From Octopus sinensis (Eukaryota), in NCBI RefSeq assembly GCF_006345805.1, contig NC_042999.1:124868001-124932000 (forward strand): a stretch of DNA of 64,000 bases. The letters run 5' to 3'. The notes under the pieces are model-generated. The model was not told the origin of the DNA, did not search any database, and worked only from the letters and a program-made list of their open reading frames with translations. The translations under genes were made by a program, and so were the position numbers. Shown in pieces: positions 22,101 through 57,400 of the stretch. Position 1 is the first letter of the stretch, and every line of letters starts with the position of its first letter.

Positions 22101-25100
22101 CATTTATAGAGAACCCATTTCTCATCACCTGTCACTATTCAGTCTACAAAAGGACTGAATAATGAGACGTGACAACAAAGAAGAGCACACATTCACTCCT
22201 TGTATGCGATTAGATTTGGAAAGTTTGTGAGGAACCCACTGACTGAAGTTGCTGACTTTTCCAATGGCACACAGGTGTCAATGAATAGTTGAATGATTCT
22301 ATGCTGTAGTTTCTGGCTCAAAATTTTTGGAACCGCCATTGACACTGGCTTATGCTTATTGTCTGATCCCCATATCTTGCATTAATATGCCAAATATGCT
22401 CCTTTGTCACTTCTATTATAGCTTTGAAAAAATAACTGTTAAAATCAAACTGCATTCTTCAAAACTTGCACTAATAATAAGGACACGGTAAAATTACCAC
22501 CTGCTTATATAGCAAGTTGATGCAGGTAGTTTTTCATAACTGTATACTTGTATATAACAAAATATGTATGACTGCAATCATAAAGTTAAAAGTAATTTAA
22601 CCTTTTGCCTGTTCAAAGCATTTTTATAAAGTTGTCCTAAATGTCCATGCTTGAATTTAGACTTTTAGTTAAACTTTTGTTTCATATGTTCTTAGAAATA
22701 TAAAGCTAAGTCCAAAAGTTACTCTGATGGTTGAAAAAAAATGGGAAATGTGCATCATATATAATGCATGGATACCAGGGAATTGTATGTTTCACAAGAC
22801 AGGCAAAAGGTTAACTATTAAACCAGTAGATTACATTTTTATGTACCTAGTAACTAATGAAAGAATTTTGTACTTTTTTATTGTTAGATTGATGATAGTG
22901 GTGAAGAAGGCGCAATTCTTTTTGAAGGAGATTGTTATACACCTGATCAAGCAGCTCCTGTGGAGCAGTATGGCTTACCTCAGGGCCGTGTACCACTGGA
23001 ACCCCAAAAATTCACAGTTCTAAAAACACCCTTTGTTGAAAACTTCAGGTAATATTCATCTTCCTTTTTTCGGATTTGTTTTCTATCCATCGTTGTCTTA
23101 ACACCTCATTTTTTAATGTTGGATGGGTTTGCAAAACAACAAATCTCCAGTTGATCTGATCTTGCATCATTTTAGTGTTTTCAGATCTGTCCTCTCCATT
23201 GTCAAATATGGTCCAAAAATATATATTTCTCTCCAGCATATTTGATCTTCTGCGCTCATTTTTGTGTTTCACTACCATAGTATTACACTCCTTACGTATG
23301 CCTCATATTAGCAGAAGTAAGTGCTCCTTGATTACTGCCTGTCCTTAGCTACTATATTTTAACTACATTTGATCTAGAAAGATTTGGTTTTTTGATGTGT
23401 AGCCTCTGGTCAGTCCTGATTGAACTGTCTTATGCTCAAAGTCTGTGATCATCTCATATATGTTTATAACATAATGTATCAGAACTACATTATCTTTGAT
23501 TCACACCTATTATTTCTTTAATATAAATGGGAAAAATAAAGACAATTGATATCCTTTTGTAAATATTTGAGTTAGAAAATTTTAAAATAAAAAATAGCTT
23601 TATTGAAATAATTGAAGTAAATTCTAGGTCTTTAATTTGATTTCTAATGTGAAAATGGAACCAATGTCATTTTGACTCAAAAAGTAAAAATGATTTCATC
23701 TGGGAAGATGAAAATTGAAGTCGGTGCTTGAATAATGGTTGACTTCTTTGTATAATATTTTGTTGGAACCAACCCTGAATGACACAATGTAGTAAAAGTT
23801 AAAGTTAAAATATTTGGACAGCAGAGTATATATTTTAGTCACAATTTACTGGAGTTGATGTTTCAATGAATTATGCTGAATGTATAACATGTAAAAGATT
23901 ACAGATGAATTCAATCTTATTGGTGAAATTGTAATAAGATTACATTTGAAGACTTATTAGTTTTCTGTAATGAAGTTAGCCAAACTTGATTTAATGTTGA
24001 GACTACTAAAAAAAATGAATTTTTTTTTATATTGACTTTTTTCATCATTTATGCTATAACATATATTATATAAAAAAAACAACAACAAAAGGCAAGCTGG
24101 CAGAATCATTAGTGTTCTAGATGAGATACTTTGTTGCATTTCTTCTGGTTCTTTATATTCTGAGTTCAAATACAGTTCTTTTATTCTAATTATTCTGCTG
24201 ACAGAATCTTGTTAGACAAAACAAGAAGACATCCTGCTAGCATCATTGATTCCATGCGGTACCGAATATACAATGTTATCTTGGAAAGGACTGTCCTTCC
24301 TGTGCTTCTGGTAAAGTTTACTTTTTATTGTTTCGCTTGATTTATTGTACTGCAGCATCATTATACAACATTTAAAATTCCTCAAATGCACTAAATATAT
24401 TTTATTTTATTATTTTAACCCTTTAGCATTCAGTTTTTCCATCAAATATAATACTTATTTGCATTGTTTTGAATTGGTCATGCATTATCTTGTAGCAGTG
24501 AGGTTTCAGTGATGTGATTATCTATTTTTAGAGTGACATTGTAGGATAGCTGTGAGAGGACAGATCTGACCAGTTTGAATAAAACATGTAGAATATTTAG
24601 GCTGGATATAGCTAGTGAAGTGCTAAAGGGTTAAAACTTATATTGACAATACTTCATGCTGTTTAAAGAATTGCAGTGTGCATTTTTTATATAGAGATAC
24701 TTTTGGAGAGATTTACAGTACCTCAAAGTATCTCATAGCCATACAATCAGAATTTCTTGACTAAGATACTGGACTTGTTGAAATCATCAAATATTTATTT
24801 ACGTAACTAATAAATAATTTTTATTTTTTAAATGTTCTATCAAAGAGTCCATAATTCTCAACTCTAGTCTCTTCTTTGATAGTTTTCTAAAAGTTTTAAA
24901 AACAAAAATGTGTTCTGCTTGGTTAATGTTTAGCAAAGTTTGGAAGCAAAGGTTAAATTTCAGGAAAACTAAATTTAAATCACTATTTACTGAAGCTGAT
25001 AAGTTTCAGTAAATGATACTGAATATTGATTTCTAAGAGACTACAGGTGGATACAATTTTATAGCTGGAATTCTAATGAAAAGATTTCATTTGATGTTTT

Positions 25101-28100: not shown

Positions 28101-31100
28101 CATAATATAATTACTCTTATGCAATAATAAAAAAAAATTCTTAGATTAATATATATCCACAAAAAGGAGAAGAGTAGAGTTAATAAAATCCACCCAAGTT
28201 TTATTAATTCCCTTCTGCTCTTCTTCCAAGATGACAGGTAAGGTTGATCATGTCCAGATTTGGACACAAAGGATTTTGTCCCTTGCCATTTCTCTTCTGC
28301 CATCCACTACCAGTGTTGCAATCACTATCATCATTATTGCAGCTGCTGCATTTGATCTTATCCCCATATTTTTTTTATATAAATACTTTAATTTATCATC
28401 TATATTAGAATGACTTATGAATTTTTTAGTTACTATTTACAAAACTAAAATTCTGACTGTGGTCAGGACAGTTTGCAGTGTTTATAAATTCTTGGCATCA
28501 CTTTAGTCTTAGCCATCTCATGTTAACTCATGACAATTGAAACATCTCTCAGGCTCTTCTACAATCCTTTTCATAAACTCATTGATTCTTTCCAGCGATA
28601 TCTGCACTTTCAGCCATCATATACATTGTTAGATCAACAAACTTGTTTCTGCATGAAGTTTCTTTCTTGTTGCCATTGTTATCATTAATACCATAAAAAT
28701 AAGTCCTATTATAATGAAAGGCATTTAATCTTGTCAAACTGTAATTTCTGCTTCTCTTAGCAGTAATGTCATTGGAAAACCAACAATACAAGCTGAATTA
28801 AAAGGCAAAATATGCTTCTCATTGAGATTATAATTTTGTACCAATTACCATTAAGATACTCAGTGGAGATTGTGCTCTTGCTAAAAAGCTTCTTTTTTTT
28901 ATCCTTCTGAGAGATGATAAACCACCAGTTGATTTAACAAATTGTTCCTTTAACAAAATAGTGTGGTCTTGTGCCTTTGTTACTATCATCATGATAGTTA
29001 GCAAAAACTGGATTTTACAGACAAAATGACTTATTTAGATTTGATCCTTCATGTTCTCAATTCAAATCCTACTGAAGTCAGCTTTATTATTCATTCTTCT
29101 GGAGTCAATAAAATACATACCTGTCAAGTGCTGAAAGCTTCTGTAATAGACAAATTTGCCTCCCCTAAAATTTTCTGGCCTTATTTCTATGTAAGAATTT
29201 ATTATAATTATTGAGTGAGAGAGCAGCACATACCATCAAAGTGACACTGGGATACAAATATACAAAACTCAATATACTCATCAAGACTACCCATCTGATA
29301 AAGGCATACCAGGCACTTAATCACAAACATATGTGTGTCACAGTGATCTCATATGAACATAAACAGCACATGACCTTGCAGGTGGGGCCCAGTTAGAATT
29401 TTCTTCAGGTCAAGTAGCCCATCCTGCTCAGAAGATCGCTGAATAAAGTTTAAGGATGATGAATGAAACACCCATATTTCCAGAGGTAAATTATTCAAAT
29501 CCTAAAGAATTCCTTTCAACACATAGCTATGATGCTCCCTCACTACTTCTGTTCATGATCAGATACACATATCGTCAGCCACTAAGGGACATGCTCAACT
29601 GGTTAAGGTGAAGCAGCTGACAAGCAAATCTGTGGTATTGAGCAGAATATTTGCTGTAGCCCATCTTTTATAACAAGGTAAAGCATGTACATGATAACAC
29701 TTCCAATCAGTTAAGATCAAAAGTCATGAGAGCCACTGCCTTTATTATTATTTAAGGCAGCGAGTTGACAGAATTGTTAGCATGCCTGGCAAAATGCCTA
29801 GCAGTATTTTTCCTGTTGCTATGTTCTAAGTTCAAATTCTGCCAGGGCTGGCTTTGCCTTTCATCCTTTCAAGGTTGATAAATTAAGTACCAGTTGAATA
29901 TTGTGGTCGATGTAATCGACTAGCCCTCTCCCCACCAAAAAAATTTCAGGCTTTGTGCCTATAGTAGAAAGGTTTATTATTTTATTCAGTCGACTTTGCT
30001 GTAAGTTCCATAAAGACCACACTACTTCTATTGGTTCTTGTTCCAACATGCTAATTTTTTTTTTTTTTTACAGCCTTCTGTTTCTGAGGAGAGTTTTGAT
30101 AGTGACAGTATCATATCAGAGGATGAAGCCCGAGTTAATTTGCCTTTGAAGAGAGTTCTACACTGGTTGAGAGTAATAGCAACTGGTAATTCACCTGTTG
30201 CTACCTATAATATCAACCTCATGCATATATTAGGGAGTGTTACTGTGAGTACTGTATTTTCGCATGTATTATTAGAAAAAAATGTTTATTTTGCTGGTGT
30301 TTCTTTTTCCTCTTTGTAAATCTAGCCACCATTCATATAGAAAATCTGTCAACAGGGAAAGATGACTGATGTCTTTTTTTTTTATACTTGTTTTAGTCAT
30401 TTGACTGTGACCATGCTTGGGCACTATCTTGAGGAATTTTAGTCAAACTAATCTACCCCAGTACTTATTTTTCTTTTTAAGCCTTGTCTCTCAGATTTTT
30501 TGCCGAACTGCTAAGTTACAGTGACGTAAACACACCAACACCAGTTGTCAAGTGGTGGTGGGGTGCAAACAAAGACACACACACTCACACGATGGGCTTC
30601 TTTCATTTAACCAAGGTGCCACATGGTGGGATTAAACTCAGAATCATGTGGCTAAGAAGCAAACTTTTTACCATAGTCATGCCTCATTGAGATACAAAAA
30701 TATTGTATGTTGCTTTGCTGCAAAAGCCCACCAGATTGTTTATAGTTGAATTTGGACTTGTTACTTTGGTCAGTTTTTGCATCTGCTTTCATTGTATTTT
30801 GATGTTCTGTCATAGGTTTTCCTGTTGTAGATGACAGATGAGACCGGCACACAAAGACACACACATATATATATAGTTCAAATGTACAGAAAATGAAAGA
30901 CAGACAGGCAAGGGAACAACAAGCAAATGTATTAGTTTGACACTTGGGAAGAATGGAAAAATATATACAGACACAGAGAGCTTCTTTCAGTTTCCGTCTT
31001 CCAAATTCACTCACACGGCTTTGGTCAGCCCAGAGCTATAGGAGAAAACACTTACCCAAGGTGCCACACAGTGAGCAAGTGTCTTCTACCGTAGCCCAGT

Positions 31101-34100
31101 CTTGTCATATTTATGTAACAAGCTTTATATTGTTTCTCTTTACCAAATTCTCTCACAATGCATTATTCAACCTAGGGCTGCAACAGAATATACTTGCGCA
31201 AGGTACCACACAGTACCACCTGAACCACAACCATGTGTTGTGAAGCAGACAGCTAAACTACACATGTATAAAACAAACTCTGATACCACACACATAGCAT
31301 TAGGACACAAACACTCCTCACATTGTGTCCGCTTACCATACTTACACAGACACATGTATATGCACACATTGCACTCTTATTGCATCCAACTTGCATTTCA
31401 TGCATCACTCATTGTACATGTTGTATATTCTTCATGAGACATTTTGCATTTGGTATATACTTAAAATATCATATACTTCGCATAAGTTAGTATACTCCCA
31501 TTACATATGTACACATCATATCTGTTTGCATATCATTCATTGCATAAGCATGCATTACATGAGAAAAACACTTGAACCATTTACGCTGTTGATAGAAATG
31601 CTCTTTTTAAGAGCAAGCCAGAACATACTTGAATCAACATATTTATCAGTGTTTTGTACAGAATTAACCTGTTAACATACAGATTACTCTGTCAAATGTG
31701 ATGCTTATTGATTAATATTGTTTTGAATTAATCATGAATTATCTTGTAGTTTCAAGATTTTGGTTATGTGATTGTTTATTGATGACTTTGTGTAGGGTAG
31801 GTGTGAGAGACTGAATCTGTTTGGTTTGAATATAAAACAGGTAGAATATTTGGGCCTAATATGGCCAGTTTACATGCTAAAGGGCTAAACCTTATCAAAG
31901 AAAGAAATGGTTCTTTATAACTTCTGTAATATTTATTATTGTAAACAGCTTTAGGTTAGTGCTTGGTGTAGTCGTCAATAAATAAAACGAAAACCAAATT
32001 TTTTCTGTGTGTAAGAAATGGGAACAAAATTGTGGTTACTGTTTATTTAGAAAAAAATAAAATAACTCTTCAGTTATATTTTTATGTATATTGACTGTTT
32101 GTTTGTTTTTTATATGTCTGCTTGTGAAATAGTTACATTTGTTTTCAGCTCTTTTACTTTATTTTCAGACTCTATGTTGTGTGGACAAGAAAGGTATTCT
32201 GTCTTGGCCAAATCCTTCTGCTGAAAAAGTCTTCTTCTTTTCTGATATTCAACAATCAACTGAGAACAACAGCCCCCATGATTCTTTATATTCTTACTCT
32301 GAAGACTTCACAGGATCTCAACACCAACCAGACCCTGGCAGCACAGCTGACTGCACATGTTTTCATAAAGAAAATACCACAGAGCCAATTCATGGTCAGT
32401 GACACTTCCATAATTTTTATTACTCTTGTAGGATTCTTTCAAAGTAATTTTTTTTTATAGCTTAGTGGTTTAAGGTATTGGGCTCACAGTCATAAGGTCA
32501 TAGGTTCAAATCCTTAGACCAGATAGCACATTGTGTCCTTGAGTAAGACAAGACACTTCATTTCATGTTGTTCCATTCTACTCAGGTGAAATGAATGCCA
32601 TCCCAGTGCTGATACAATCCTTTCTCACTCCATCTGTTACATCCTAGATGTTCTGCTGCATCAAGTATGAGATAGTGTCTGTGTTTGGTTGTGACTACAT
32701 GGGCACCTAAAATCAGAGGAAACGTGTTATGTTATCAAATTATACCTCCTTCCATGTGATGGCTATGTTTTCTTATATAGTGGAACAAAAGATAGATCTA
32801 AAGGGAGACTGTGCTAGGTTTTTTACGTTACGTTATAATCCCAGTCCATGCTATAAAATGGTTTCTGTTATACAGAACATGAAAACATGCTAAAAAGCAT
32901 TACTGATGCAACAGCAAAGATTCATGGGTGATGTTGTCATGCATATTTGATGATAAAATAGCACAATAAGTATAAGACACTGCAAAAATAGCCCTATCCT
33001 ACTCATGGCAGTATATCAAAACAGACATAAAACAATGATGACTATGATGCTGTTACTACTGTACAATTTTGTATCCATTATTCTCTGTGAGTATTGAATA
33101 TCCAGATCAAACTGACGGGTCATATCCAACTCCACTGATATTGATTTAAAATTTTTTTTATTTTTGTGCCCATCCAGTGATGAATTTCAAGTTATTAAAC
33201 ATCGCACTTAACACTGTTAAGCTGAAAATATTTATTAGAGTGCCTGAACTCTTTACAAATATGAATTGTACATATTTCTAATTATGTAGATTGAGCAGTT
33301 GAGAATTATTAAGCACAAACTATTAAGTGAGCATCTCTATGCAGGGCATCCACAGGGAAATTAAACACTTTCTTTAACCCTTTGTCTTCACTTGTCTACT
33401 ATGGGTGGCCAAAACAGTATAGTCTTCCTTACCAGTTAACCTCTTTTACATGATTAAATAACTCAGGACACCAAAAGGTCAGCTAACACATACCAACTAT
33501 AACAAAATTGAACATTAGCCCTCTAGCATTTAAACCAGCCATATCCAGTTCAAATATTCTACCTGTTTTATTTTCTAACCAGCCAGATCCAGCCTATCAC
33601 ACCTACCTTTCAGTGCCTTCTAAAAAATATACAATCATGTCATCAAAATTTCAAGGCTATGAGATAATTAAAAGAAAAAAAAAACATTGTGAATGAAAAA
33701 GCATTACATTTGACAGAATAATCTGAATGCTAAAGGGTTAAACTGCTGGTGGTGGTGGTGATGATAATGGTTAATTTCTTTTTCAGTTCCTAAAACCAGC
33801 TGTCATGTTGAAGTTTTGGATTTAACTCATGATTCAAAGGTAAATATAAGTTGAATTTTTTTTATTTTCAGAAATATTTTTATTGCTTAGGTACAATATG
33901 AAGTCAGTTATAAATATGAACTGTACATATTTCTAATTATGTAGATTGAATGATTGAGAATTCATCATCATTTAGCGTTCGCTTTCCATGCTTGCATGGG
34001 TTGGACGGTTCAACTGGGGTCTGGGAAGCCAGAAGGCTGTACCAGACCCAGTCTGATCTGGCAGTGTTTCTACGACTGGATGCCTTTCCTAACACCAACC

Positions 34101-37018
34101 ACTCCGTGAGTGTAGTGGGTGCTTTTTACGTGCCACCGCCACGGAGGCCAGGCGAGGCTGGCAACGGCCACGATCGGATGGTGCTTTTTATGTGCCACTG
34201 GCACGCACAAACAATACAAATTTAAGAATAATGAGCAAATTATCCAGCAACTTCCTCTTTGTTTTACACATGAATTGCAAATACTGCTTACAAGTGCATG
34301 TATGTGTATATATATATATATAACTGCTAATATCCTATATAGCAAGGTCTGTTGGCAGTCTTATGGTGAAGTTGTAATATTTCTTTTCTTCAAAATTTAC
34401 AAAATTCCTTTTATAATTTTGTGGTTGCCTTTTTTAATTCCTTGGTTTAATGTTTTCAGTTATAATTAATTTGATTTATTTCTCATTTCAGAATTCATTT
34501 GGATTACATTTTGACGATCCAACCTGGAAAAATCATATATCATCTTTGAAACCATTAGTAAGCATTTGAACTCTATATATACTTGTGATATTTGAAGTAT
34601 TGGCTTCCCAAAAATCAAGTTTTAATGTTTTTTTTTTTTTTGTTTTTGTTTTTTTTTTTGAGAATCACTCTTCAGTTAAATAGTTGTACAATTACCTATA
34701 TGATCTGGAACTCATATTTTACTCTTAAACAATACACAGTTCTCTACTCATCTGAGTGTAAAAGAAAAACAATAGGATTAAATATTACTGATTTTTAGAT
34801 TGAAAATTGGTGGGGAGGTTAACATCGTTTTTGAAATTGCATTGTTCTCAAGTTAATGTGGTAAATTGTCTACCATTGTTCAAGATTAATTTCTTTTTAA
34901 TTCTAAAAAGAAATTAACATCTTAAATTTATTATTTGTGATGAATGTATAAATTCTTATAAAAAAGATAGCTCTGAATATTTATAAGTATCTTGAAGGAA
35001 ATAGTTCTTAATTTAGAATTTGTTTAAAATTATGTGTAGAACAATCATTTGGGGGGGGGGGGGGTAAACAAACTTTAAATGATGGTGGTATTGAATGATT
35101 ACTGTATCTTCATTTAGACTATGTGTAAGAGAATTTATTGTCATTAGTTTGAAGGGCAAAGCCAGAAAAAGAACAGCCAATGTCATAATGCTATGGACCT
35201 TTGTATAAAAAAAGTGTCTGATCACTTTTTAATAGATGCTTATGTGAGTTAGCAAGACAGATTGGGTTCTCCAACAATGCCCTTGATATATTTACTAAAA
35301 AGCAGATTATTGGTGTCTATAGTTATGTTGATTGAAAAACTGATGAATTTTTGTTGGCTTTTTGTGTCAGTCACAAAAGACAACTAATATTTAGAGTAAT
35401 AACAAAATAAAGGGAAGGTCAAAGTAATGGAATAGTTTGTATGATGTCTTACTGTACCTAGTCAGAAGTCTTATTTAGAGTTCAAATCTTGTCAATGAAG
35501 TTTTTTTTAATTTTTTTTTTTATACATTCCTTTGGTCAGTAATTACCTGAAATCCATTCAGTATACCCTACTCCTGTCTCCTATTAAGAATTGTCCCTGT
35601 ATTATGTGATGAAATTAATACATCCTGAAGTCCTCCAAAACATTTAATTCATATATGAAAGAGGGTTACAAGCAACCCAAGAGCTAAAAAATGCTAGAGG
35701 ACCTTTTGATTTATAGAATTAAATTTCATATTAGTGTTCTGGTTAAGAAATGTAAAATTGTTTTGTCCCGAAAATTATTGTAATTATTTAAAGAAATATT
35801 TATTTTTTTAAATTTTATTTTTTCTTATTTCATATTGATCTCTTATTAGGGATTAAATATCTTAGCTAACACCTGTAATACAAGTATTGCTACTTGGTAT
35901 TCTCAGTTCACTGACCATGTAGCAACTGCTGCTCTGGAAAATGAGGGCACTGTTGCAGTACTAAATAGAAGGTATGTATTCTTTGATCTTCATATTATTA
36001 CAATTTGTTGTTTGTTTTTGAACTTTTCTGAAAAGCAAAACAACTGGTTAACATTCACTACACTCCAAGCCCTTCCTTCCACTGCCCATCGCTTTGACTA
36101 CTTCTCTCTCAGTTCCCTTCTATTACATATATTTCATTTTCCACTTGATAAAACAATTTGTAAGAAAGAGAAGTTGTCTTTGTGTATATGTATGTATGTG
36201 AAAGAGTGGGAGGAAAGTTATCTAAGGGAAGACAAAGTAAAACAGTCAGAGCAAGTGTGTCTTAAGTAGATAAAGAGAATAAGAATGAAGGAATGAAATG
36301 GAAGGTAAGAGTTGTTTTCTGGCAGTATACTGAATTACTTAGTAAAAAAAATCTGTAACAACTACTAACTAAATGTAGTTAATGAAGATTAAGGAATCAT
36401 TCTTACTTCAAAATAGGTGTATGTGTAAAGTATGTGTATATGTGTGTGTGTATATATATATATATATATGTGGCACATAAAAAACACCATCCGAGCGTGG
36501 CCGTTTGCCAGCCTCGTCTGGCAACTGTGTCGGTGGCACATAAAATCACCCACTACACTCTCGGAGTGGTTGGCGTTAGGAAGGGCATCCAGCTGTAGAA
36601 ACACTGCCAGATCTGACTGGACTGGTGCAGCTTTCGGGCTCCCCAGACCGGGCACGTAACAAACACCATCCGATCGTGGCCGTTTGCCAGCCTCATCTGG
36701 CACCTGTGTCGGTGGCACATAAAAACACCATCCGAGCGCGGCCGTCTGCCAGCCTCGTCTGGCACCTGTGTCGGTGGCACATAAAAAACACCATCCGAGC
36801 GTGACCGTTTGCCAGCCTCGTCTGGCACCTGTGTCGGTGGCACATAAAATCACCCACTACACTCTCGGAGTGGTTGGCGTTAGGAAGGGCATCCAGCTGT
36901 AGAAACACTGCCAGATCTGACTGGACTGGTGCAGCTTTCGGGCTCCCCAGACCCCAGTTGAACCGTCCAACCCATGCTAGCATGGAAAGCAGACGTTAAA
37001 TGATGATGATGATGATGA

Positions 37019-37203: not shown

Positions 37204-39410
37204 TGCATACATTTAATTAGTGTATGATGTACACTAGGAAAAACCACCCAGTGGCAGGTCATCATTTGGATGAATAGATTTGAAGTGAAGCTCCTACAAT
37301 ACCCTGCATGTTAGTATGCAAGAAAGCATGCTAGTGTGTGTGTGTGTGTAGTCAGTTTTGATACACTTTCCTTTTATAAATTCCTCTTGTAAGTTATTAG
37401 TGGACTTGAGAATTTAATAGAATTTTGTGAAAAAGTACCATGTTGTGTTATCAAATCTGCAATCTCATTGTGTCTCTGAGAAGTTCTTAACCACACAGTC
37501 ATGCCTGCACCAATATAGCAACCAGAAAGGGGGTTGGGATTGGATGGTATTTACTAATTCCTTCATTGAATGGAATTGTTTTCATATTCAGTATTTTAAA
37601 TATTTCCTCTTTTAATAGATGCTTATGTGAGTTAGCAAGACAGATTGGGTTCTCCAACAATGCCCTTGATATATTTTCTAAAAAGCAGATTATTGGTGTC
37701 TATAGACAGGTGGTGAGTATTCTTTTCTGCCTCTAAACCATTTTAATTACTATTCTCTATTATTTAATTCAAACTTACATTTTTCAGTTTACCATTTTAT
37801 TGATTACATTGACTCCAGAGCTCAACTGGTATTTTATCAACCCCGAAAGGACGAAAGGCAAAGTCAACCTTAGCAAAATATTCAACTTGGAACATAAAAA
37901 TGGACAAAATGCTTAGCAGCATTTTGCCCAGTATGCTAACAATTCTGCCAGCTCACCTTAATTTACCATTTTATCATATTTGATTATGCTCATTAGATGA
38001 GACTAGTAGAAATACATCTGAATAACACAGCAGTCATTGTTTTTAATGGTTTAGTCAAGAAGAAAGGGCTGTGCCCATAGCATTCACAACCCTCTGAGAC
38101 CAACATGGCACTAATTATAAATAACAAGCTAGTTGTTTACCTCTTCCACCCAGGCCCACACAACATCCTTTTTCTCTGTATCAGCTGTTAAACTCCACTT
38201 CAGCTGACCCTTCCTCCTCAGAATTCTCTCCCCACCCACATTTTCCCTGAGGTTTTTAACCTATAGATCTTCAAGCTCAATAAAAAAAAAACTGATTTGA
38301 TCTCACCTGTCTCAAAAACACTCCAAAGATCTTGAATGTTACTAGGCTAAACCTTAAAAAGATCAAAATCTTAACTGTTTTCTTTATCGCATAGTAATTG
38401 TTAATTATCTGAATTAAAAAATTTTGTGCATATTCAATTTTTTTTTAATCCTGTAAATTGATATTTGTATTCACTATAACTATAAAAGCCAGAATGAAGT
38501 TACTCCTATTTTCTTTGGAATTTATTTTCAGCTTGAAGAGAGAGCTGCTAAAGAGAGGCTGCAGAGAGCTCGTTCAAATGTACATCATAAAATTCCAATG
38601 CCAAATATGGTTTCAATTGTTGTGAAAGAAAAAAATTCTGGTAATTTTTTTTTTCCTTGCTCTCCTACAGGTAAAATGTATTCACGAATGTCCATCAAGG
38701 TAATGATGGCAGACGATGAACTTGATTTTGATAAATGAGTGTTCCAGTTTTTCAATCAACATAACTATCATAATTGTGTCATTAATGTTCTTTCTTGGCC
38801 AAACTCAGTGTGAAACTGTGTGTGACAATGTTGGGTCCTCAAACAGTAGATATAGATTATCAGATGAGCTTCTACATACTTTCTATCTACCCCATCTTTC
38901 ACTCACAAGGTTTGGATCAATCTGAGGCACTGGCAGAAGACAGTGTAAGATGCCTCACTGTGGGATTATGAAGCAAACTTCTTAACCACACATCCATTCA
39001 CAAAGTGCAGGTATGGTTGTGTGGTTATGAATCTTGTTTTCCAACCATGTGGTCTTGGGTTCAGTCCCACTGTATGGCATATTGGATAAGTGTTTTCTAT
39101 TATAACCCCTGGTCGATTAAAGCCATGTAAATGGATATGATACCCAGAAACTGAAAGAAACATATCACACATGCACACACATATATACTTGTGTGTGTAC
39201 ACTTGTCTAGATATCACGTGATAATAATTGTAAATGAGCGTCATTTTCATACAATCAAGCTTGTTCATTTCCAGTTTTCCATAGCTGTGGGAAAATGTTA
39301 TCTTGCTCGGAAATAAGCGAGGGCATTCAGCCATAGAAAATTTGCCTCAACAAATTTTGTCTGACACACACAAGCATGGAAAAGGTATCATTAAATGATG
39401 ATGATGATAG

Positions 39411-45400: not shown

Positions 45401-48400
45401 AGTTTAGAATTTATATCTTATAACTGAAAGGCTCCTATTTCTAGTACTCAGAGTTACTTGTTTCCGATCATCAACTGCTAAACCAAGCCTGGTTTTGTAT
45501 TAGGTCTTGTAATTTGTTGCTTCTGGTGAATTAACAGTCTGACGTATATCAATCATCATCATTTAGTGCCTGCTTTCCATGCTGGCATGCATTAGACAGT
45601 TTGACTGGAACTGGTAAGCTGGAGAACTGCACCAAGTTCTAGTCTGATTTGGCATAGTTTCTATGGCTGGATGCCCTTACTAACACCAACCACTCCAAGA
45701 GTATAATGGGTGTTTTTTACATATCACCAGCACAGGTGCCAGTTATGTGACACCAGCATCAGCCACGACTATAATTTCAGTTTCAAATCTAAAACAATTA
45801 GGAAAATAACTTGTGATATAATGATATTGATATATTAATGTTTGATTGTACCTAAATTTTCTCTTTTCCAGGAGTTTGTGCAAATGATTGATAAACTTGA
45901 AACTGCGTTCATAAGATTTGTGCATTTTTCAAATGAAAATGAACTCAGAAGTAGGGTATGTATCCATCAGTAAAAATTTTAATGAAGGTTTCTAACTTAG
46001 GCATGAAGCCAGGAATTTGGGAGGTGGTGATTAAGTCAATTCTATTACTTAACTGGTACTTTACTTTATCATCCCTGAAAAGATGAAAGGTGAAGTTAAC
46101 TTCGGTGGGATTTGAACTCGAAACATAAAGGGCCAAAATAAATACTCTGAGTTTGCAAACCCACCTGCCAAATAAACATTTTAATAATAATCCTTTTTAC
46201 TATAGGCACAAGGCCTGAAATTTTAGGGGATGGGTAAAGTCGATCACATTGACTCCAGTACTTGACTGGTACTTAATTTATCGACCCCAAAAGGATGAAA
46301 AGCAAAGTCAGCCCCAGTGGTATTTGAACTCAGAACATAAAGACAGATGAAATGCCACTAAGCATAATAATACTTTCTACTTTAAGGCACAAGACCTGAA
46401 ATTGAGATGGGGGCTAGTCAATTACATCAACCCCAGTCCTTCACTGGTACTTATTTTATTAACCCTTGAAGGATGAAGTGCAAGTTGACCTTGGTGGTAT
46501 TGGAACTCTGAATGTAAAGGCAGTAGAAATGTCACTAAGCATTTTATCTGGCATGCTAATGATTCTGCTAGTTTACTACCTTTTTTAAAAGAATTTACTT
46601 CAGCAGGATTTGAATTCAGAATGTAGAGTTGCAATCCCATACCATTCCCAAACAACTCTACCAAATAGCTGCTTGTGCATTTAACTACAATAATAATAAT
46701 CCTTTCTACTATAACACAAGGCCTGGAATCTTGCACGAGAGAGTTAGTTGATTATATTGACCTCAGTGTTCAACTGGTACTTATTTCATCAACCATGAAA
46801 GGATAAAAAGCAAAGTCAACCATGGTGAGATTTGAACTCAAGATGTAAAATTGGGCAAAATGCCACTAAGCATTTTATCTGGTGTGCTAATGATTCTGCC
46901 AGCATGTCACTTTATTAATCTCCCCATATAACAGTGCTTTTCAAACTTTTTGCTGGAGCGGAACCCCAAGGAAACATTCCACTGGCTCGAGGAACCCCTG
47001 TGCAATAATTTGTCTTATGCACACATATCTGCACAGGAGAATTAAAAATTACTGCCGATTTTAGCAGTTTTGTAACTTCTTGTGGAACCCCTGGACTGTA
47101 CTGGCGGAACCCTGGTTGAAAACCTCTGCCATATAATAATGAGCACAGTGTTTTTATATATTTGTGTGTGTGTGTGTATTTCCAAAATCACACTGTAGGA
47201 GTGACAGGAGAGGAGAGAAAATAGTAATTCGGTGAAGAAGTAGTAAGAGTAATAGCCACGACTGCGAGGGGGTAAGAGAAAGTAATAGAAATGGGAGAGA
47301 GGAAGTGGCAAAGAGAGCATTGTGTATCTTCTACTATAATAATACTCTTGCATATTTCTCCGTCAAAACATATGAATGAGAAAGGAAGGGGTGATTCACT
47401 GATGGAAGTGGGATAGTGAAAAGTCAACAGTGAAACAAAAATCAAACAGCGCTTCAACTCTATGTGAGTATGAGTGTGTGTGTGTGTAAAAGAGAGGAAT
47501 GTGTTTGTGTAAAATACATTTATATATTAGAGTGAGTGTATATGTGTTTGTGTGTGTTTTAGAAAGATACATAGAAATAGAATTACACACATATACACAT
47601 TTACACATATATTATATATATAAACAGATACACTTAAAAAGGAAGGAAGCAGGCTGTGACAAAGTATAGAAAACCGCGTTCACTACAGACTGTGCTATCA
47701 TACGTATAAATGTATACATATGCACATGCACAGTTGAAACACTGTTTGATTTTTTTTTTTCACTTTCTTGTCCCCTTTTTACCTATAAAATACAATTAGC
47801 TGTGATTTTTGATGGCACATAAGGATCAGCTCATAATATTAATAATAAAGAACTCTTATTTTGCTAAAGGAGTGCCTAAAATTTGCATCTTTCTCTGTTT
47901 TTCAAAATTTCTCTTTGAATTTTTCTTTGGTTTGTCATTTCCTTTTAACTTTTAATTTCAGGTATTTTCAGAGAAAATGGGTTTAGAAGCTGGTTGGAAT
48001 TGTCATATTTCTTTAGCATCACCACTAAAATCTGAGGAAATATTCATGCCAGGGACATCTCAGGGAGAATTATCTCATCGTACATCAAAATATTCCAGTC
48101 GAGTCTCAAATGATACAATAGGGAGGGACTCTCATGGTTTGAATACTAAACTAAAGCATTACCAACAACAGCAGAACTTGCCCTTCAAGCAAAATCTTGG
48201 CAGTGGAATGCACAGTCGAAGTTTCAGTGCACCTAGTGTTATCAACCTCGACATGTATCTCGTCAAATTTGATGATAGTTCTTCTACCATTCAAACCAAC
48301 TGCGATACCACATTTTGTACTAATCCTGAATTCCAAAAAGAAATGGAAAATGTTGAAAAAGATAGTCTCCTCAGGGACCCTTTAAATGACTCAGGTGAAC

Positions 48401-51400
48401 TGTTGACTTCACAGACCAGTGCGTCTTCTGACGAATATAATAGTGAGGATGACCACTGTTCTGAAAGTCATCTAACGTCTAGTTGTGTTACTGATAACAC
48501 AGAATTCAGCTTGCCAGGAGTTCTAGATAATCGGGCAAGTATTTCCTCTCTCTCCTGTTTTACCTTTTTTTTTTTTTTTTTCATGAATTCTAAAATTCTA
48601 AAATAAAATTGGACGGTATTGTATTAATAGGTACAGGCATGACTATGGTAAGAAGTGTGCTTCCCAACCACATAGTTCCAGGTTCAGTCCCACTGTTGGC
48701 ACAGCATCTTAGGCAAGTGTTTTCCACTATAGCCCCAGGCAAACCAAAGTCAAGTGAGTGGATTTAGTAGATGAAAACTGAAAGAAGCCTGTCATGTATG
48801 TGTGTATTTTTTGGTGTTTGTCCCGAACCACTTGACAACCACTGTTGGTTTGTTTATGTCCTCGTAACCTAGCTATCTGAGAAAGAGAGACCACTAGACT
48901 AACTACCAGGTTTTGGAAAAAAGATAAGTACCGGGGTTAATTTGATCAAATAGAAAAAAGAACCATTCAAGGAAGTACCCCAGGATGGCCATAGTCTACA
49001 GGCTGAAATAAATAATAGATAGAAGATATGATATTCCTTTGTGTTCATCTAAATTGAGTTCATTCACATTTAATATTCAGCCATGCATTAATTAAAATGT
49101 TTTGCTACTTATAATTTTGTAACTCCTCTATGTAAACTATATATGTACGCATACTGAATTACAATACAAACTAGATACACATTGCTTAAGTTTATTACTA
49201 TGATAGTACTTTCTTAATGAGTATGACAATTCATTTATTGATAGATTACTACTGTTCTGTTTTCTTGACATCAAAATCAAGGAAAAAAATATATTGAAAA
49301 TCTTTAATTCCTTGCAAACACTTTCTGAAAATGGCACAATCTTGTTATGCGTGCTGTGTAGTGGCTATTTCAAATCTGGTCATTTCATTTTTGCATGATG
49401 CTTGTTAATTAGTAAAAGAACATGTTTGTTATGAAAGAAATGTTTGTAAGCTGTTTTATTTGATGCAGTTGTGTGTTGGTGTTAGGAAGGGCATCCAACT
49501 GTAAAAATCCTGCCAAAACTGAAGTCTGGTGCAGGCTTCTGCCTGGCCAGCTCTTGTGAAACCATCCCATCCATGCTAGCATGGAAGGCAGACATTAAAT
49601 GATGATGATGATTTATGTATTTGAAGCATGAGGAATAATCTATATAAAATATGAGAAACAAAGGAAAAATTTGTTAATATCATCACTTAACATTCACTTT
49701 CCATGTCAACATGGGTTAAAGAATTTGACAGGATCCAGTAAGTTGCAAGGTTACATTGGGATCTAATGTCAGCTTTGGTATGGTTTCTATGGCTAGATGC
49801 CCTTCCTAATGCTAACAACTTTACAGAGTGTACTGAATGCCTTTTTCCATGCCATTGGCATTAGTGATTTTGCCAATCTGTCCCTCATTTGTGAAATATA
49901 TAAAAAATAAAAAAATATTTTAAAATATTCATTTACTGTAATTTGTGGTAAGTTCTCTAAAATTAAGATTGTTCTACAATTTTCCCAAGTAGTGCTGATC
50001 TGATTTTAATTTCATATTTTTATCTAAAGCAAGATAATGGAAAAGAAAATGGAATAGCATTTATTTTGTTGTTTAAATCCTAGATTGACCTTGAACAAGC
50101 TGAAGTGGACACCTATCACTGAAGATGTGCATGAAATCATGTAATCTAGCAGTTCTGGCACCTATACTGGACAATTCTTGTCCGCTAATGATATATGTAT
50201 GTCTATTCTTAGAACTGTGCATCTGTATGAGAGGTTCTCTCAGGGCAAATATGTCAGTATTCTGTGTTCAAAGAATATGTCCCTATCAAATAGGATATAA
50301 AGACTACCATTTGGTGTTAATGCTGCTTCCATCACTAATATTTTATTTTTTTATAATACAAAGTATATCTAGGACAACATTAGCTAATGTATTTCCCTTT
50401 TCTTGAGATTGGAATGAAACTTGGCTGTTATTTCTGACAAGTGACATGACTACATTAGCTTTTGTTATTTACTATTATTTCAAGATTGTATTAAATACTA
50501 AAATAATATCAGAATTGGACAGGCTCTTTAATCTCTAAGGGTAGCCATGATATCCTTAAGTATTGGGAATGTAGCAAATAGTTCTACTTGAAAAAAACAT
50601 AACAAACCTTGTAAGTGAAAACAACTATTAAGTGAAAGACAGGCATGAAATGATGATAACAGTTTTTTGCTTCAAGTTACAGTATTTTTCAAAGGAAAAC
50701 TAAAATATCTTTAGTTGCTGTTTTAGAATAAAATATTGTCATCTAATTATAATATTTTCTTCTATAGGTACAAGGCCTCAAATTTTTGTGGAAGGAGGCT
50801 AGTTGATTACATCAAACTCAGTACTGGACTGGGACTTATTTCATTGATTCTGAAAGGATAAAAGGCAAAATTAACTTTGGCAAAACTTAAACTCAGAACG
50901 TAAAGACTAACAAAATACTGTAAATCATTTTGCCCAATGTGCTAACAATTTTGTCAGCTCTCTTGCTATTCATCTAGTTATAGAAATTAAACCGTTTGAG
51001 CGTTTGGATTTCAGAAATTTTAATACTCCAAGTTTAACTACTTGATAGATTTTGTTTCTTTTTAACATATTAAATTGAATTTCAATGAACAAACTGTTCA
51101 CTAATCCATGCTGATATCTGCCAACCAATAAATTCTCACACACAGTGAACAATATTCAGAACAGTAACTGGCATATTTATTCTTAATGTATTCTGACAGA
51201 TTTGAAAATGAATATGCTAATCATTGTTGTGCTTGCCACTAGAGAACAGCTTCTCTTTCATGACAAATAAGTGTTCATAGCACATTTACTTCATTAGTTC
51301 AAGTGTTTCTGAGATACCAGTGTTTCAACATCTTATATCTCATCAGCCAGAAGCATCCCCAGACCAATATTAAGTTTTTTTTTCATTTATCTCTTTTATT

Positions 51401-54400: not shown

Positions 54401-57400
54401 CTGTGCAGGTGGCACGTATAAAGCACCCACTACACTTGCGGAGTGGTTGGTGTTAGGAAGGGCATCCAGCTGTAGAAACACTGCCAGATCAGACTGGAGC
54501 CCTGGCTTCCCAGACCCCGGTCGAACCATCCAACCCGTGCTAGCGCGGAAAACGGACGTTAGGCGATGATGATGATGATGATAAAAACAATGATAATAAG
54601 GGTTATTACAAGGTGGCATAGTATTCAGAATTATCCAACGTAATATGTCTCTAAATTGTTATGAGAATATTACTGGATTTCTATATTAACTGTTGGATAA
54701 CCTATTTTAAATACCTAACTGTGGGCAAACTGGTAAATATTTGGAGTAATCCCTTACTATTTACACACACACACACACACATATATGATGGGCTTCTTTC
54801 AGTCTCTGCCTATCAAATCCATTCACAAATCTTTAGTCATCCTGAGGCTATAGTAGAAGCCACTTGCCCAAGGTGTCACACAGTGGGACTGAACCTGGAG
54901 CCAGCTTTGTTTCTTCATAACTTTCAGAAAATTGGTATTTTTCCATGAAATTTTCTGCAAACACCTATCAAATTGTGTAGATTATGATTACATCAGAATT
55001 TGATATAAAGGAAAAAAATTGGTGGGATAGCACACATACTGATACACACCACATATATCTACAAAATGACACTTAAAATTTCAAAAAATTGTGATCTGTG
55101 TCAGTATGTATGTGTACATGCTTACCATTTTACTTTCCACATCAGATTCCTATATAATCGTACCTCTGAAAAGTATTTGTAGAAGTCTTCATTTAAGAAT
55201 ACCCACTTTTCCAAAAGTTATGAAGAACAAAGCCAACTTGTGTGAATTTTCTGGAACTTCTCTTCCCTGCCTCAAAATTCCAATATAATTGGAATTTACA
55301 ACAATATAATTGCAATCTACACCATTCCAAAGAGTATTTGTAGAAAATTTCATTAAAAAAATATTCATTTTCTGGAAGTTATGGGGAAACAAAGTAGTTG
55401 GACACATTTATGTATGTATGTCCATTGCTTTAACATAACAAATTCTAAGATTACATAGTTGTTATATATTTACATATCAGCTTGCTTTGCTTGGCTTTAA
55501 TTTTGTGTGTAACAATAATTATCTAACTGCATGTTATATATAAACAAAGAATATACTTCTTTCATGTGGTTTGAATCAAAAGGGTGACAACAATGTGAAT
55601 GAGATGGACTCAGTTTTTCACTACACATAGATATTAATTGGGTAGCAGTATTTACGTTCTAGGGAGAGTCATTATGCCAATATCATTAGATACAAACATG
55701 AGGTTTTTACAATGATAGTATGTTTAGTAACATAGACAAACTAAAATGCATCATTGTGAATGTGTGAATTAATATGAAAATTTATTGACCTTGCCTTACA
55801 ACCATTTTGGATTTGATAAAATAAGAACCAGCTGAGCACTGGGGTCAATGTAATTCACTTACACCCTCACTTGAAATTGCTGGCCTTGTATGTAAAGTAG
55901 AAAGGATTAGTATTATTATTTAGGCGGCAAGCTGGCATCTTTACATTCTGAGTTCCACCATGTCAACTTTGCTTTTCATTCTTTCAGGGTTAATAAATAA
56001 GTACTAGTTGAGCCCTGAGTTTGATGTGGTCAACTTACCTGCTCTCTTGAAACTGCTGGCCCTGTGCCATAATATGAAATCATTATTATCACTATTATCA
56101 TCACTATTATTATTATTATTATTATTCCAGATTGGCTATAGAGCCTCTATATCCACAACTCTGCCGTAATGAGCCTCAAAATGTAGAACTGAAACCAGTC
56201 CACACTCATTTAACCCCTTTACATCTTGCTAGTTCGTTGATGTCCAGCCCTTGTCCATTGCTGTTTAGAAATTATGAAAATATCAGTCTCATCCAACTTA
56301 TTGCTGAGGTAGGAGTTTTCACATTATGACTAAATACTTTAGGATTTAAATTTCAATTCACTTTCTACTATTTGAGTAATAATCTGTTAAACCTGATATT
56401 ATTCTCTCTCCTAAAGGCTCGTAATCATGTTTTATCAATGGGAAACTGCTTCCAATTCATGCTGTGCTGCCACCTGTCTTTGAGTCTTGTACAAGTGATG
56501 GCTACATTGTTCCTTCTACCACCACCAATCAGTGGGCATCAAATTTTGTGGCTCATCTTCATCGTTGTACCACTGCTCAGTCTGGGTCTGATGGGCAATC
56601 CTGTTGACCCTCGTAACATGACTTTAGCCACTGCTAAGAACTGTGATCATATCAACAAACAAGTAAGTGTTTCTTCATTTATTATACTTTCTGATCTGTC
56701 TCTCTTTGTTATATAATCTAAGTGCCATGTCTAACAATATCAGTTTCAAATTTTGGCACAAGGCTTGTAGGTTTGAGAGAGAGGATAAATTGATTAAATC
56801 AACCTCAGTGTTCAACTGGTGCTTGTTTTATCAACTCTGAAAGAGTGAAAGGCAAAGTTGATCCTGGCAGAATTTGAGCTCAACATAAAGACATGAAATG
56901 TCACTATGCATTTTGCCTAGCATGCTAATGATTCTGCCAGCTTGCTGCCTTACCTTGTCTAGTAATATTAGTACAACATAAAATGTGTACATTACATTAT
57001 CTCATCCTGTATTATTGTTAGTCATCCTTCAGGAAGCAGAGCTGCAAATGTGAGATTAACTTCTAGGGAATGTGTGAGCCATGAAAGAGTTGTGATCCAT
57101 ATACCATGCATGTGAATCTTAATAAGAGGAAGGAGTGCCAAATGTGTTTGGTTTTACTTCTGTTGATACACAGAGATGAAAGATAACTTATTAATCCTGG
57201 GTTGGGTTGTTTAGTGTCATCTTCAGATGGAGAACTAGAATGCTGAGATAATTCAATGTAATATACTGTGAAAGAATTGGGTGGAGAGTCTGCAAGTGAA
57301 GTAGAGGTTGATTTATCACAAGTTGAAGGATTACTGCAGATCAGATTCATGCTAGTGGAGTGAGTAGTCATGAGTTTGTTGCTTGATCCCTTAGGAAGGC

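What the first reader, a model, noticed from the sequence alone, without database searches (positions are those of the whole stretch)
35227..35322. Out-of-order, near-perfect copy of exon 13 (with its acceptor) placed upstream of exon 12
Seen: 96 bp (9-nt acceptor TTTTAATAG plus 87 nt of exon) match 37610-37705 with one substitution (TCT to ACT, Ser to Thr). Similarity stops abruptly on both sides, the donor is missing, and the copy lies 2383 bp upstream with exon 12 in between. Inference: a recent DNA-level duplication. Splicing exon 11 (phase 0) to it reads ATG CTT ATG TGA, so it would act as a poison/NMD exon. Back-splicing of the exon 12 donor (phase 2) to it would give a circle whose junction mimics the normal e12-e13 junction except for the one SNP.
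Basis: partly seen in the sequence, partly recalled or inferred. Interest (0 to 1): 0.7.

Follow-up and report, generated by a model that had tools for sequence, protein, structure and literature searches.

The report
Exon fragment patched into upstream intron
A 116-base patch in an intron of a TMEM94-like gene is stitched from two nearby pieces of the same gene, one of them flipped, which is the signature of error-prone DNA repair, so it is most likely a harmless scar rather than a working "poison exon".

Summary
Window 35227-35322 copies 37610-37705 (the last 9 nt of intron 12 plus the first 87 nt of exon 13) at 95/96 identity.

35319-35342 is an exact 24-bp inverted copy of 38745-38768 (intron 14). 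The two pieces overlap by 4 bp (ATAG). The feature is therefore one 116-bp composite insert, 35227-35342, built from two templates 2.4 and 3.4 kb downstream, one direct and one inverted, joined at a microhomology.

Beyond the insert the flanks show no residual similarity to the sources, no TE ends and no other copies in the window. This is the signature of template-switching repair or replication (MMBIR/FoSTeS-type templated insertion), a known mutation class.

The copied acceptor is weak: 3.05 bits against 10.8 for the real exon 13 acceptor, and 8th of 70 AGs in intron 11. There is no donor. Any use of it gives a TGA at codon 4.

No reads, RNA-seq or cephalopod sequences were reachable, so expression and assembly correctness are untested. 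The feature is probably inert and of low to moderate interest.

The parts
35227..35322 (+). Piece A of the insert: a direct copy of 37610-37705 (the last 9 nt of intron 12 plus the first 87 nt of exon 13), 95/96 identical
35294..35294 (+). The single difference: A here against T at 37677 (ACT Thr in the copy, TCT Ser in exon 13)
   Evidence: This residue varies among homologues, so the ancestral state cannot be inferred from them.
35319..35322 (+). ATAG, the 4-bp microhomology shared by the end of piece A and the start of piece B (the template-switch junction)
   Evidence: the two maximal matches overlap by these 4 bases
35319..35342 (-). Piece B of the insert: an exact inverted copy of 38745-38768
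   Evidence: (2 matches in the window, 0 expected in 100 shuffles)
35236..35247 (+). ATG CTT ATG TGA, the premature stop met if exon 11 (phase 0) is spliced to the copied acceptor
37610..37705 (+). Template of piece A: the intron 12 / exon 13 boundary. The real exon 13 is 37619-37712, with its donor GTGAGT at 37713.
38745..38768 (+). Template of piece B, in intron 14, 104 nt past the exon 14 donor (38641)
34492..34557 (+). Exon 11 (NSFGLHFDDPTWKNHISSLKPL). Its donor GTAAGC is in phase 0. Intron 11 (34558-35849) hosts the insert.
35850..35971 (+). Exon 12, which lies between the copy and its template. Its donor GTATGT is in phase 2.
38532..38640 (+). Exon 14, which lies between the two templates

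Best explanation
The feature is the scar of one error-prone repair or replication event in intron 11 of a TMEM94 orthologue.

A broken or stalled 3' DNA end in intron 11 was extended on a nearby template and copied 96 nt across the intron 12 / exon 13 boundary. It then dissociated and re-annealed through its last 4 nt (ATAG) to CTAT at 38765-38768 on the opposite strand. There it copied a further 20 nt in the inverted direction and was rejoined to intron 11. The same path can be read in the reverse order from the other strand.

The result is a 116-bp templated insertion, 35227-35342. The templates stay intact.

- **Shown:** the two-piece composition, the orientations, the 4-bp overlap, the sharp borders and the intact sources.
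- **Inferred:** the mechanism (template switching of the MMBIR/FoSTeS or multi-invasion SDSA kind). The event is recent, with 1 difference in 116 nt. It is functionally neutral or nearly so, at most a weak cryptic 3' splice site whose use would end in a premature stop.
For: - Piece A is 95/96 identical to 37610-37705, and piece B is 24/24 identical to the reverse complement of 38745-38768. They abut with a 4-bp overlap. Chance expectation for the 24-mer is 0.
- The pieces are contiguous at 35227-35342, but their templates lie 1040 bp apart. Exon 13 is the homologue-supported, in-frame, collinear exon. Intron 11 is therefore the recipient.
- Local alignment of 300-bp flanks scores no better than shuffles. 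This argues against an older, larger duplication.
- No inverted or direct terminal repeats surround the insert. Self-hit depth there is 1. A mobile element as carrier is therefore unsupported.
[quoted passage not shown] This is a known and common class.
- The splice-site model shows the copied acceptor is unremarkable among decoys.
Against: - No empty site, second individual or raw read could be examined. The outer junctions, and any microhomology there, are undefined, and assembly correctness is unproven.
- The templates are 2.4 and 3.4 kb away. This is far more than the 100 bp or less used to define MMB-TIs in PMC8421209, and a 96-nt tract is long for polymerase-theta fill-ins (own knowledge).
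- Neutrality is inferred, not shown. The piece carries a real exon body, which could hold splicing enhancers, and an AG acceptor about as strong by my crude model as exon 12's own (3.05 against 3.7 bits).
Confidence: 0.75

Rival explanations
1. One reading: the copy works as a poison, NMD-triggering splice acceptor. It would act either as a cassette or as an upstream alternative 3' splice site of exon 12, or as a decoy 3' splice site that slows removal of intron 11. In any of these ways it would tune TMEM94 output.
For: - It has an intact AG acceptor with a branch-point-like CTGAT 15 nt upstream, plus 87 nt of genuine exon body.
- Use from exon 11 gives a TGA at codon 4.
- As an alternative 3' splice site of exon 12 it needs no donor of its own.
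- Exon 12's own acceptor is equally weak by the PWM.
- Decoy exons that promote intron retention are documented (PMC6097662).
Against: - The acceptor scores 3.05 bits against a median of 8.6 for real sites. About 8% of all decoy AGs score as high, and it is 8th of 70 in intron 11.
- The best downstream donors are weak (6.6 bits or less).
- The piece arrived together with an unrelated inverted 24-mer, as an accident would.
- With 1 substitution in 116 nt it is too young for conservation to speak.
- No expression data could be reached.
Confidence: 0.08
2. Assembly, polishing or gap-filling artefact: a chimeric read or a local mis-join placed the 116 bp in intron 11.
For: - Library chimeras often join inverted segments at microhomologies (own knowledge).
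- 116 bp is about one short-read length.
- No reads were available to check.
Against: - The window has no N at all in 64 kb, so no gap was filled here.
- The copy differs from its template by a substitution, as a diverged paralogous sequence does and a chimera of the same haplotype does not.
- Both outer junctions lie in unique sequence.
Confidence: 0.09
3. Two separate events: the 20 nt after the exon copy are native intron 11 sequence, and a later event copied 24 nt spanning the junction, inverted, into intron 14.
For: For piece B alone the direction of copying cannot be read from the sequence, because both ends are intronic.
Against: It needs two rare events at the same spot, and the second would have to start exactly 4 nt inside the first. 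A single composite event explains the adjacency and the overlap.
Confidence: 0.03
4. Capture and transport of gene fragments by a mobile element (Pack-MULE- or Helitron-like), or by reverse transcription of pre-mRNA.
For: The window is rich in SINE-like repeats (about 14% self-similar). Piece A contains the intron-exon boundary, as pre-mRNA does.
Against: - There are no terminal inverted repeats, target-site duplication, poly(A) or repeated flanks around the insert.
- Piece B is antisense to the gene, which a single pre-mRNA template does not give.
Confidence: 0.03
5. A circular-RNA device. Either the exon 12 donor back-splices to the copied acceptor, giving a 736-nt circle (35236-35971). Or the 24-nt complementarity between intron 11 and intron 14 loops out exons 12-14.
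For: - The back-splice junction would equal the linear e12-e13 junction for 58 nt.
- The 24-nt RNA duplex is predicted at -31.6 kcal/mol and brackets exons 12-14.
Against: - 24 nt is below the roughly 30-40 nt shown to suffice for circularisation (PMC4201285).
- A 244-nt, 88% inverted SINE pair (33962-34204 and 36768-37009, -429 kcal/mol) competes in the same pre-mRNA.
- The acceptor is weak.
- There are no RNA data.
Confidence: 0.02

Closest known systems
Microhomology-mediated templated insertions from template switching (FoSTeS/MMBIR; 'MMB-TI', PMC8421209)
   Same: A short insert copied from nearby sequence while the template is kept. More than one template, in forward and inverted orientation. 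A few bases of microhomology at the switch. Found as harmless germline variants.
   Different: The templates here are 2.4 and 3.4 kb away, not within 100 bp. The first tract is long (96 nt). The outer junctions cannot be inspected without an empty allele. The organism is an invertebrate, for which I know of no survey of such events.
Polymerase-theta end joining / synthesis-dependent MMEJ 'filler DNA' (own knowledge)
   Same: Break repair that primes on microhomology, copies a stretch, dissociates and re-primes, leaving a patchwork.
   Different: Typical fill-ins are a few to about 30 nt and are templated within tens of bases of the break. A 96-nt tract from 2.4 kb away is atypical.
Poison (NMD) exons and decoy exons (PMC6097662, PMC7373989)
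   Same: An intronic, exon-like element with a 3' splice site whose use brings in a premature stop or stalls intron removal.
   Different: Known examples have both splice sites, measurable inclusion and usually conservation. Here there is a weak acceptor, no donor, no expression evidence and a very recent accidental origin.
Tandem exon duplication giving mutually exclusive exons (PMC9013439, PMC9741552)
   Same: An exon-derived duplicate inside the same gene.
   Different: The copy is out of order (upstream of exon 12) and truncated by 7 nt. It has no donor and is in the wrong phase relative to exon 11. It cannot substitute for exon 13.
Intronic inverted repeats that promote circular RNAs (PMC4201285)
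   Same: Reverse-complementary sequences in introns on either side of exons 12-14.
   Different: Only 24 nt, and out-competed by much longer SINE pairs in the same transcript. No back-splice evidence.

Membership tests
Templated insertion by template switching (MMBIR/FoSTeS-type) | The inserted sequence is a copy of genomic sequence that is still present at its source | tested here: met
   95/96 match to 37610-37705 and 24/24 match to the reverse complement of 38745-38768. Both sources are intact.
Templated insertion by template switching (MMBIR/FoSTeS-type) | Serial switches: more than one template, and orientation may invert | tested here: met
   Two abutting pieces, one direct and one inverted. 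Their templates lie 1040 bp apart.
Templated insertion by template switching (MMBIR/FoSTeS-type) | Microhomology at the switch junctions | tested here: inconclusive
   The internal junction shares 4 bp, ATAG. The two outer junctions cannot be scored without the empty site. A CTGAT repeat at 35217-35221 and 35339-35343 is not significant on its own.
Templated insertion by template switching (MMBIR/FoSTeS-type) | An empty (pre-insertion) allele exists in relatives or the population | not testable with these tools
   No cephalopod sequence could be reached. The protein search gave 45% identity at best. Exact-protein look-ups found nothing. The metagenome scan found nothing.
Poison / NMD cassette exon | Competent 3' and 5' splice sites | tested here: not met
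   The acceptor scores 3.05 bits against a median of 8.6 and is 8th of 70 AGs in intron 11. The copy ends 7 nt before the exon's donor. Downstream cryptic donors score 6.6 bits or less.
Poison / NMD cassette exon | An in-frame premature stop on inclusion | tested here: met
   Exon 11 ends in phase 0, and inclusion reads ATG CTT ATG TGA at 35236-35247.
Poison / NMD cassette exon | Inclusion seen in transcripts, raised when NMD is blocked | not testable with these tools
   No RNA data are available.
Tandem exon duplicate / mutually exclusive exon | Adjacent to its parent, same length and phase, with both splice sites | tested here: not met
   Exon 12 lies between the copy and its parent. The copy has 87 of 94 nt, no donor, and the wrong phase after exon 11.
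Gene-fragment capture by a mobile element or retrocopy | Terminal repeats, target-site duplication, poly(A), or flanks repeated elsewhere | tested here: not met
   None is present in intron 11. Self-hit depth is 1 at the insert. Only the window could be searched.
circRNA-promoting intronic complement | Inverted repeats of about 30-40 nt or more in the flanking introns, plus back-splice reads | tested here: inconclusive
   A 24-nt perfect complement at -31.6 kcal/mol brackets exons 12-14. It is shorter than the length reported sufficient (PMC4201285). Back-splice reads are not testable.
TMEM94 (ERMA) orthologue, the host gene | Collinear similarity to named TMEM94 proteins along the exons | tested here: met
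   The best hits are TMEM94 of insects, a spider and a bivalve, at 36-45% identity and E down to 1e-75. tblastn places the exons collinearly on the + strand. There was no Pfam hit for the exon 9-15 segment.

The most novel reading that the evidence does not exclude
The accidental insert has been co-opted. Because it carries a genuine exon body behind an AG, it could engage the spliceosome as an upstream alternative or decoy 3' splice site of exon 12. A fraction of TMEM94 pre-mRNA would then go to NMD or intron detention, or to a circle whose junction mimics e12-e13. That would be a poison element caught at birth, created by template-switch repair rather than by a transposon or point mutations.
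Probability: 0.06. Interest if true: 0.5.

Novelty: new member of a known kind. Interest (0 to 1): 0.22.

Why it matters
As it stands this is a clean, fully resolved example of a two-template, microhomology-joined insertion in an invertebrate germline. Such scars are rarely described outside humans, yeast and model organisms.

It also shows a route by which repair accidents place splice-competent exon fragments into introns, which is raw material for new or poison exons.

There is a practical consequence. Reads across the e12-e13 junction, or across an e11-e13 exon-12-skipping junction, cannot be told from copy-derived junctions unless they reach the A/T site 59 nt in or the ATAGTTATG junction. 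Annotators of this gene should know that.

The feature does not open a new question by itself.

Tried and rejected
- **Finding the same locus elsewhere.** A protein search with the spliced exons returned only distant TMEM94s (45% identity at best) and no cephalopod. Exact-product look-ups of three ORFs spanning the insert or exon 13, and of the 209-aa ORF in the large exon, found nothing. A metagenome scan with a 42-mer shared by both copies found nothing. Presence or absence in other genomes, read support and expression therefore stayed untested.
- **An old larger duplication with only the exon part conserved.** Rejected. The flanks align no better than shuffles.
- **A mobile-element carrier.** Rejected within the window.
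- **Further templated pieces in the flanks.** Nothing longer than chance 9-12-mers turned up.
- **Known RNA families in the window.** None.
- **Pfam on the exon 9-15 peptide.** No hit.
- **Polarising the A/T difference with homologues.** The residue varies (S, E, D, T, A, K, Q, G, L), so this is uninformative.
- **A coordinate bug in a decoy-score control.** The bug gave a spurious 0.008. One search corrected it to 0.078.

Full report
**Observation**

Reading the two stretches directly and aligning them confirms the finding. Window 35227-35322 equals 37610-37705 at 95 of 96 positions without gaps (BLAST E = 4e-43). The one difference is A at 35294 against T at 37677. Exact-match extension gives blocks of 67 and 28 nt on either side of that site. 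In register, identity just outside the match is 20-30%. This is the only pair in the 64-kb window at 96% identity or more over 40 bp or more that is not part of a repeat family.

**Host gene and exon model**

A query of spliced candidate exons hits proteins named transmembrane protein 94 in insects, a spider and a bivalve, at 36-45% identity and E down to 1e-75. TMEM94 (also called ERMA) is a P-type-ATPase-like ER membrane protein whose Mg2+-pump role is debated (PMC12134183, PMC13322241).

tblastn of the homologues places collinear exons on the + strand. Two small exons found with short queries complete the series, at about 24203-24304 and at 33787-33839.

| Exon | Coordinates | Notes |
|---|---|---|
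| e10 | 33787-33839 | |
| e11 | 34492-34557 | phase 0 at both ends |
| e12 | 35850-35971 | ends in phase 2 |
| e13 | 37619-37712 | donor GTGAGT at 37713; the final V of YRQV is conserved |
| e14 | 38532-38640 | |

The copy therefore contains the last 9 nt of intron 12 and the first 87 of the 94 nt of exon 13. It lies in intron 11, and exon 12 sits between it and its parent. Joined to exon 11 it reads ATG CTT ATG TGA.

The exact-match scan shows that 35319-35342 is a perfect 24-nt reverse-complement copy of 38745-38768. That site is in intron 14, 104 nt beyond the exon 14 donor. The 24-mer occurs only at these two places, and 100 dinucleotide-preserving shuffles gave no match even with 3 mismatches allowed.

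The 24-mer starts 4 nt before the end of the exon 13 copy. ATAG therefore belongs to both pieces. The feature is one 116-bp composite, 35227-35342:
- 96 nt copied in direct orientation from 2.4 kb downstream;
- then 20 further nt copied in inverted orientation from 3.4 kb downstream;
- the two joined at a 4-bp microhomology.

The pieces are contiguous here, but their templates are 1040 bp apart. Exon 13 is the collinear, homologue-supported exon. Intron 11 is therefore the recipient.

**Tests of alternatives at the DNA level**

- 300-bp flanks of the insert align to the flanks of the templates no better than shuffles do. This is not a decayed larger duplication whose exon part was preserved.
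- Intron 11 has no terminal inverted or direct repeats bracketing the insert. The insert and its flanks are single-copy in the window. A search for further templated pieces found only chance-level 9-12-mers. A transposon or retrocopy carrier has no support.
- A CTGAT pentamer occurs 5 nt before the insert and across its right end. It could mark the original break site, but a 5-mer repeat at this spacing is not significant.
- The window contains no N, and the copy has diverged from its template by one substitution. Both facts argue against a gap-fill or chimeric-read artefact. Only reads can settle this.

**Mechanism**

The anatomy matches template-switching repair or replication. A 3' end primes on a nearby template, copies, dissociates, re-anneals through a few bases (possibly on the other strand), copies again and is rejoined. 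Such microhomology-mediated templated insertions are documented as ordinary germline variants in humans. There are about 100 of 25 bp or more per person, some built from up to five templates in both directions (PMC8421209).

This case differs in the distance to the templates (kilobases, not 100 bp or less) and in the length of the first tract. I cannot distinguish MMBIR/FoSTeS from multi-invasion synthesis-dependent repair or from an unusually long polymerase-theta product.

With 1 difference in 116 nt the event is young. No rate for this lineage was available to date it.

**Possible function**

I built position-weight models from this gene's own 21 acceptors and 22 donors. The main results are these:

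| Site | Score (bits) |
|---|---|
| Copied acceptor (exon 13's own site left out) | 3.05 |
| Real exon 13 acceptor | 10.8 |
| Median of real acceptors | 8.6 |
| Exon 12 acceptor (leave-one-out) | 3.7 |

- About 8% of 3307 decoy AGs score at least as high as the copy. It ranks 8th of 70 AGs in intron 11 (one search corrects a coordinate slip).
- The difference from the real site comes from the upstream context, which is A-rich instead of pyrimidine-rich.
- No donor was copied. Cryptic donors downstream score 6.6 bits or less, against a real-donor median of about 8.
- A donor is not strictly needed. Used as an upstream alternative 3' splice site of exon 12, the copy would give a 736-nt exon with a stop at codon 4. 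Low-level noisy use therefore cannot be excluded.

The inverted 24-mer could pair intron 11 with intron 14 (-31.6 kcal/mol). This is shorter than the roughly 30-40 nt shown to drive circularisation (PMC4201285). It is also dwarfed by a 244-nt inverted SINE pair in introns 10 and 12.

Decoy-exon regulation of intron retention is a known phenomenon (PMC6097662). It is the most interesting reading not excluded, and I give it a few percent.

**Verdict**

The sequence feature is real and the host gene is correctly read. The 'duplication' is a two-template repair scar of a known kind and is most likely inert. The poison-exon and circular-RNA ideas remain untested speculation with weak sequence support.

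Assembly support, presence in other individuals or species, and expression could not be examined with the data reachable here.

Noticed in passing
window 39689 and 48535: Two introns of this gene appear to use GC donors (TAG|GCAAGT and CGG|GCAAGT). Only these joins give the homologue-supported reading (…TDSDRKKVLDFYH…, …VLDNRAQLPRGIEN…), and nearby GT sites break the frame.
   Followed up: partly
window 36470-36649 and 36774-36953 (intron 12): A 180-bp pair at 98.9% identity, 304 bp apart, inside a cluster of SINE-like copies. A 63-bp-period array (36651-36849, 3.2 units, 91%) lies between them. This is a second young local duplication, close to the templates of the insert.
   Followed up: partly
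window 33253-33307 and 33908-33962: A 55-bp direct repeat (89% identity, with a 28-bp exact core) lies on either side of the 53-nt exon 10 (33787-33839). The second copy abuts a SINE-like element. Its origin is unexplained.
   Followed up: partly
window 33962-34204 (-) and 36768-37009 (+): An inverted pair of SINE-like elements (88% over 244 bp) sits in introns 10 and 12 and brackets exons 11-12 and the insert. Its predicted RNA duplex (-429 kcal/mol) is far stronger than the 24-nt pairing created by the insert.
   Followed up: partly
window 37710-37718: Exon 13 ends in tandem donors, CAG|GTG|GTGAGT, 3 nt apart. Homologues support the distal one (…YRQV). The proximal one would drop one valine in frame.
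   Followed up: no
window 38671-38699 (intron 14): An exon-like 29-nt stretch with a good acceptor and donor (cctacag|GTAAAATG…ATCAAG|gtaatg) lies between exon 14 and the template of piece B. Homologues do not need it, and its inclusion would shift the frame of the next exon.
   Followed up: no
window 34663 and 35371 (intron 11): Two decoy AGs with acceptor scores (14.4 and 10.0 bits) as high as real sites. One follows a T32 run. The other is 29 nt past the insert (ttggctttttgtgtcag|TCA).
   Followed up: no
window 37799-37957 and at least six other sites (e.g. 4525-4683, 9243-9403, 29762-29917, 46748-46903, 50803-50960, 56789-56942): A second dispersed repeat family (72-75% identity). One copy starts about 90 nt after the exon 13 donor. 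About 14% of the window is self-similar repeat.
   Followed up: no
window ~24203-24304: A small coding exon (RILLDKTRRHPASIIDSMRYRIYNVILERTVLPV) found only with short homologue queries. Its splice borders were not defined.
   Followed up: partly
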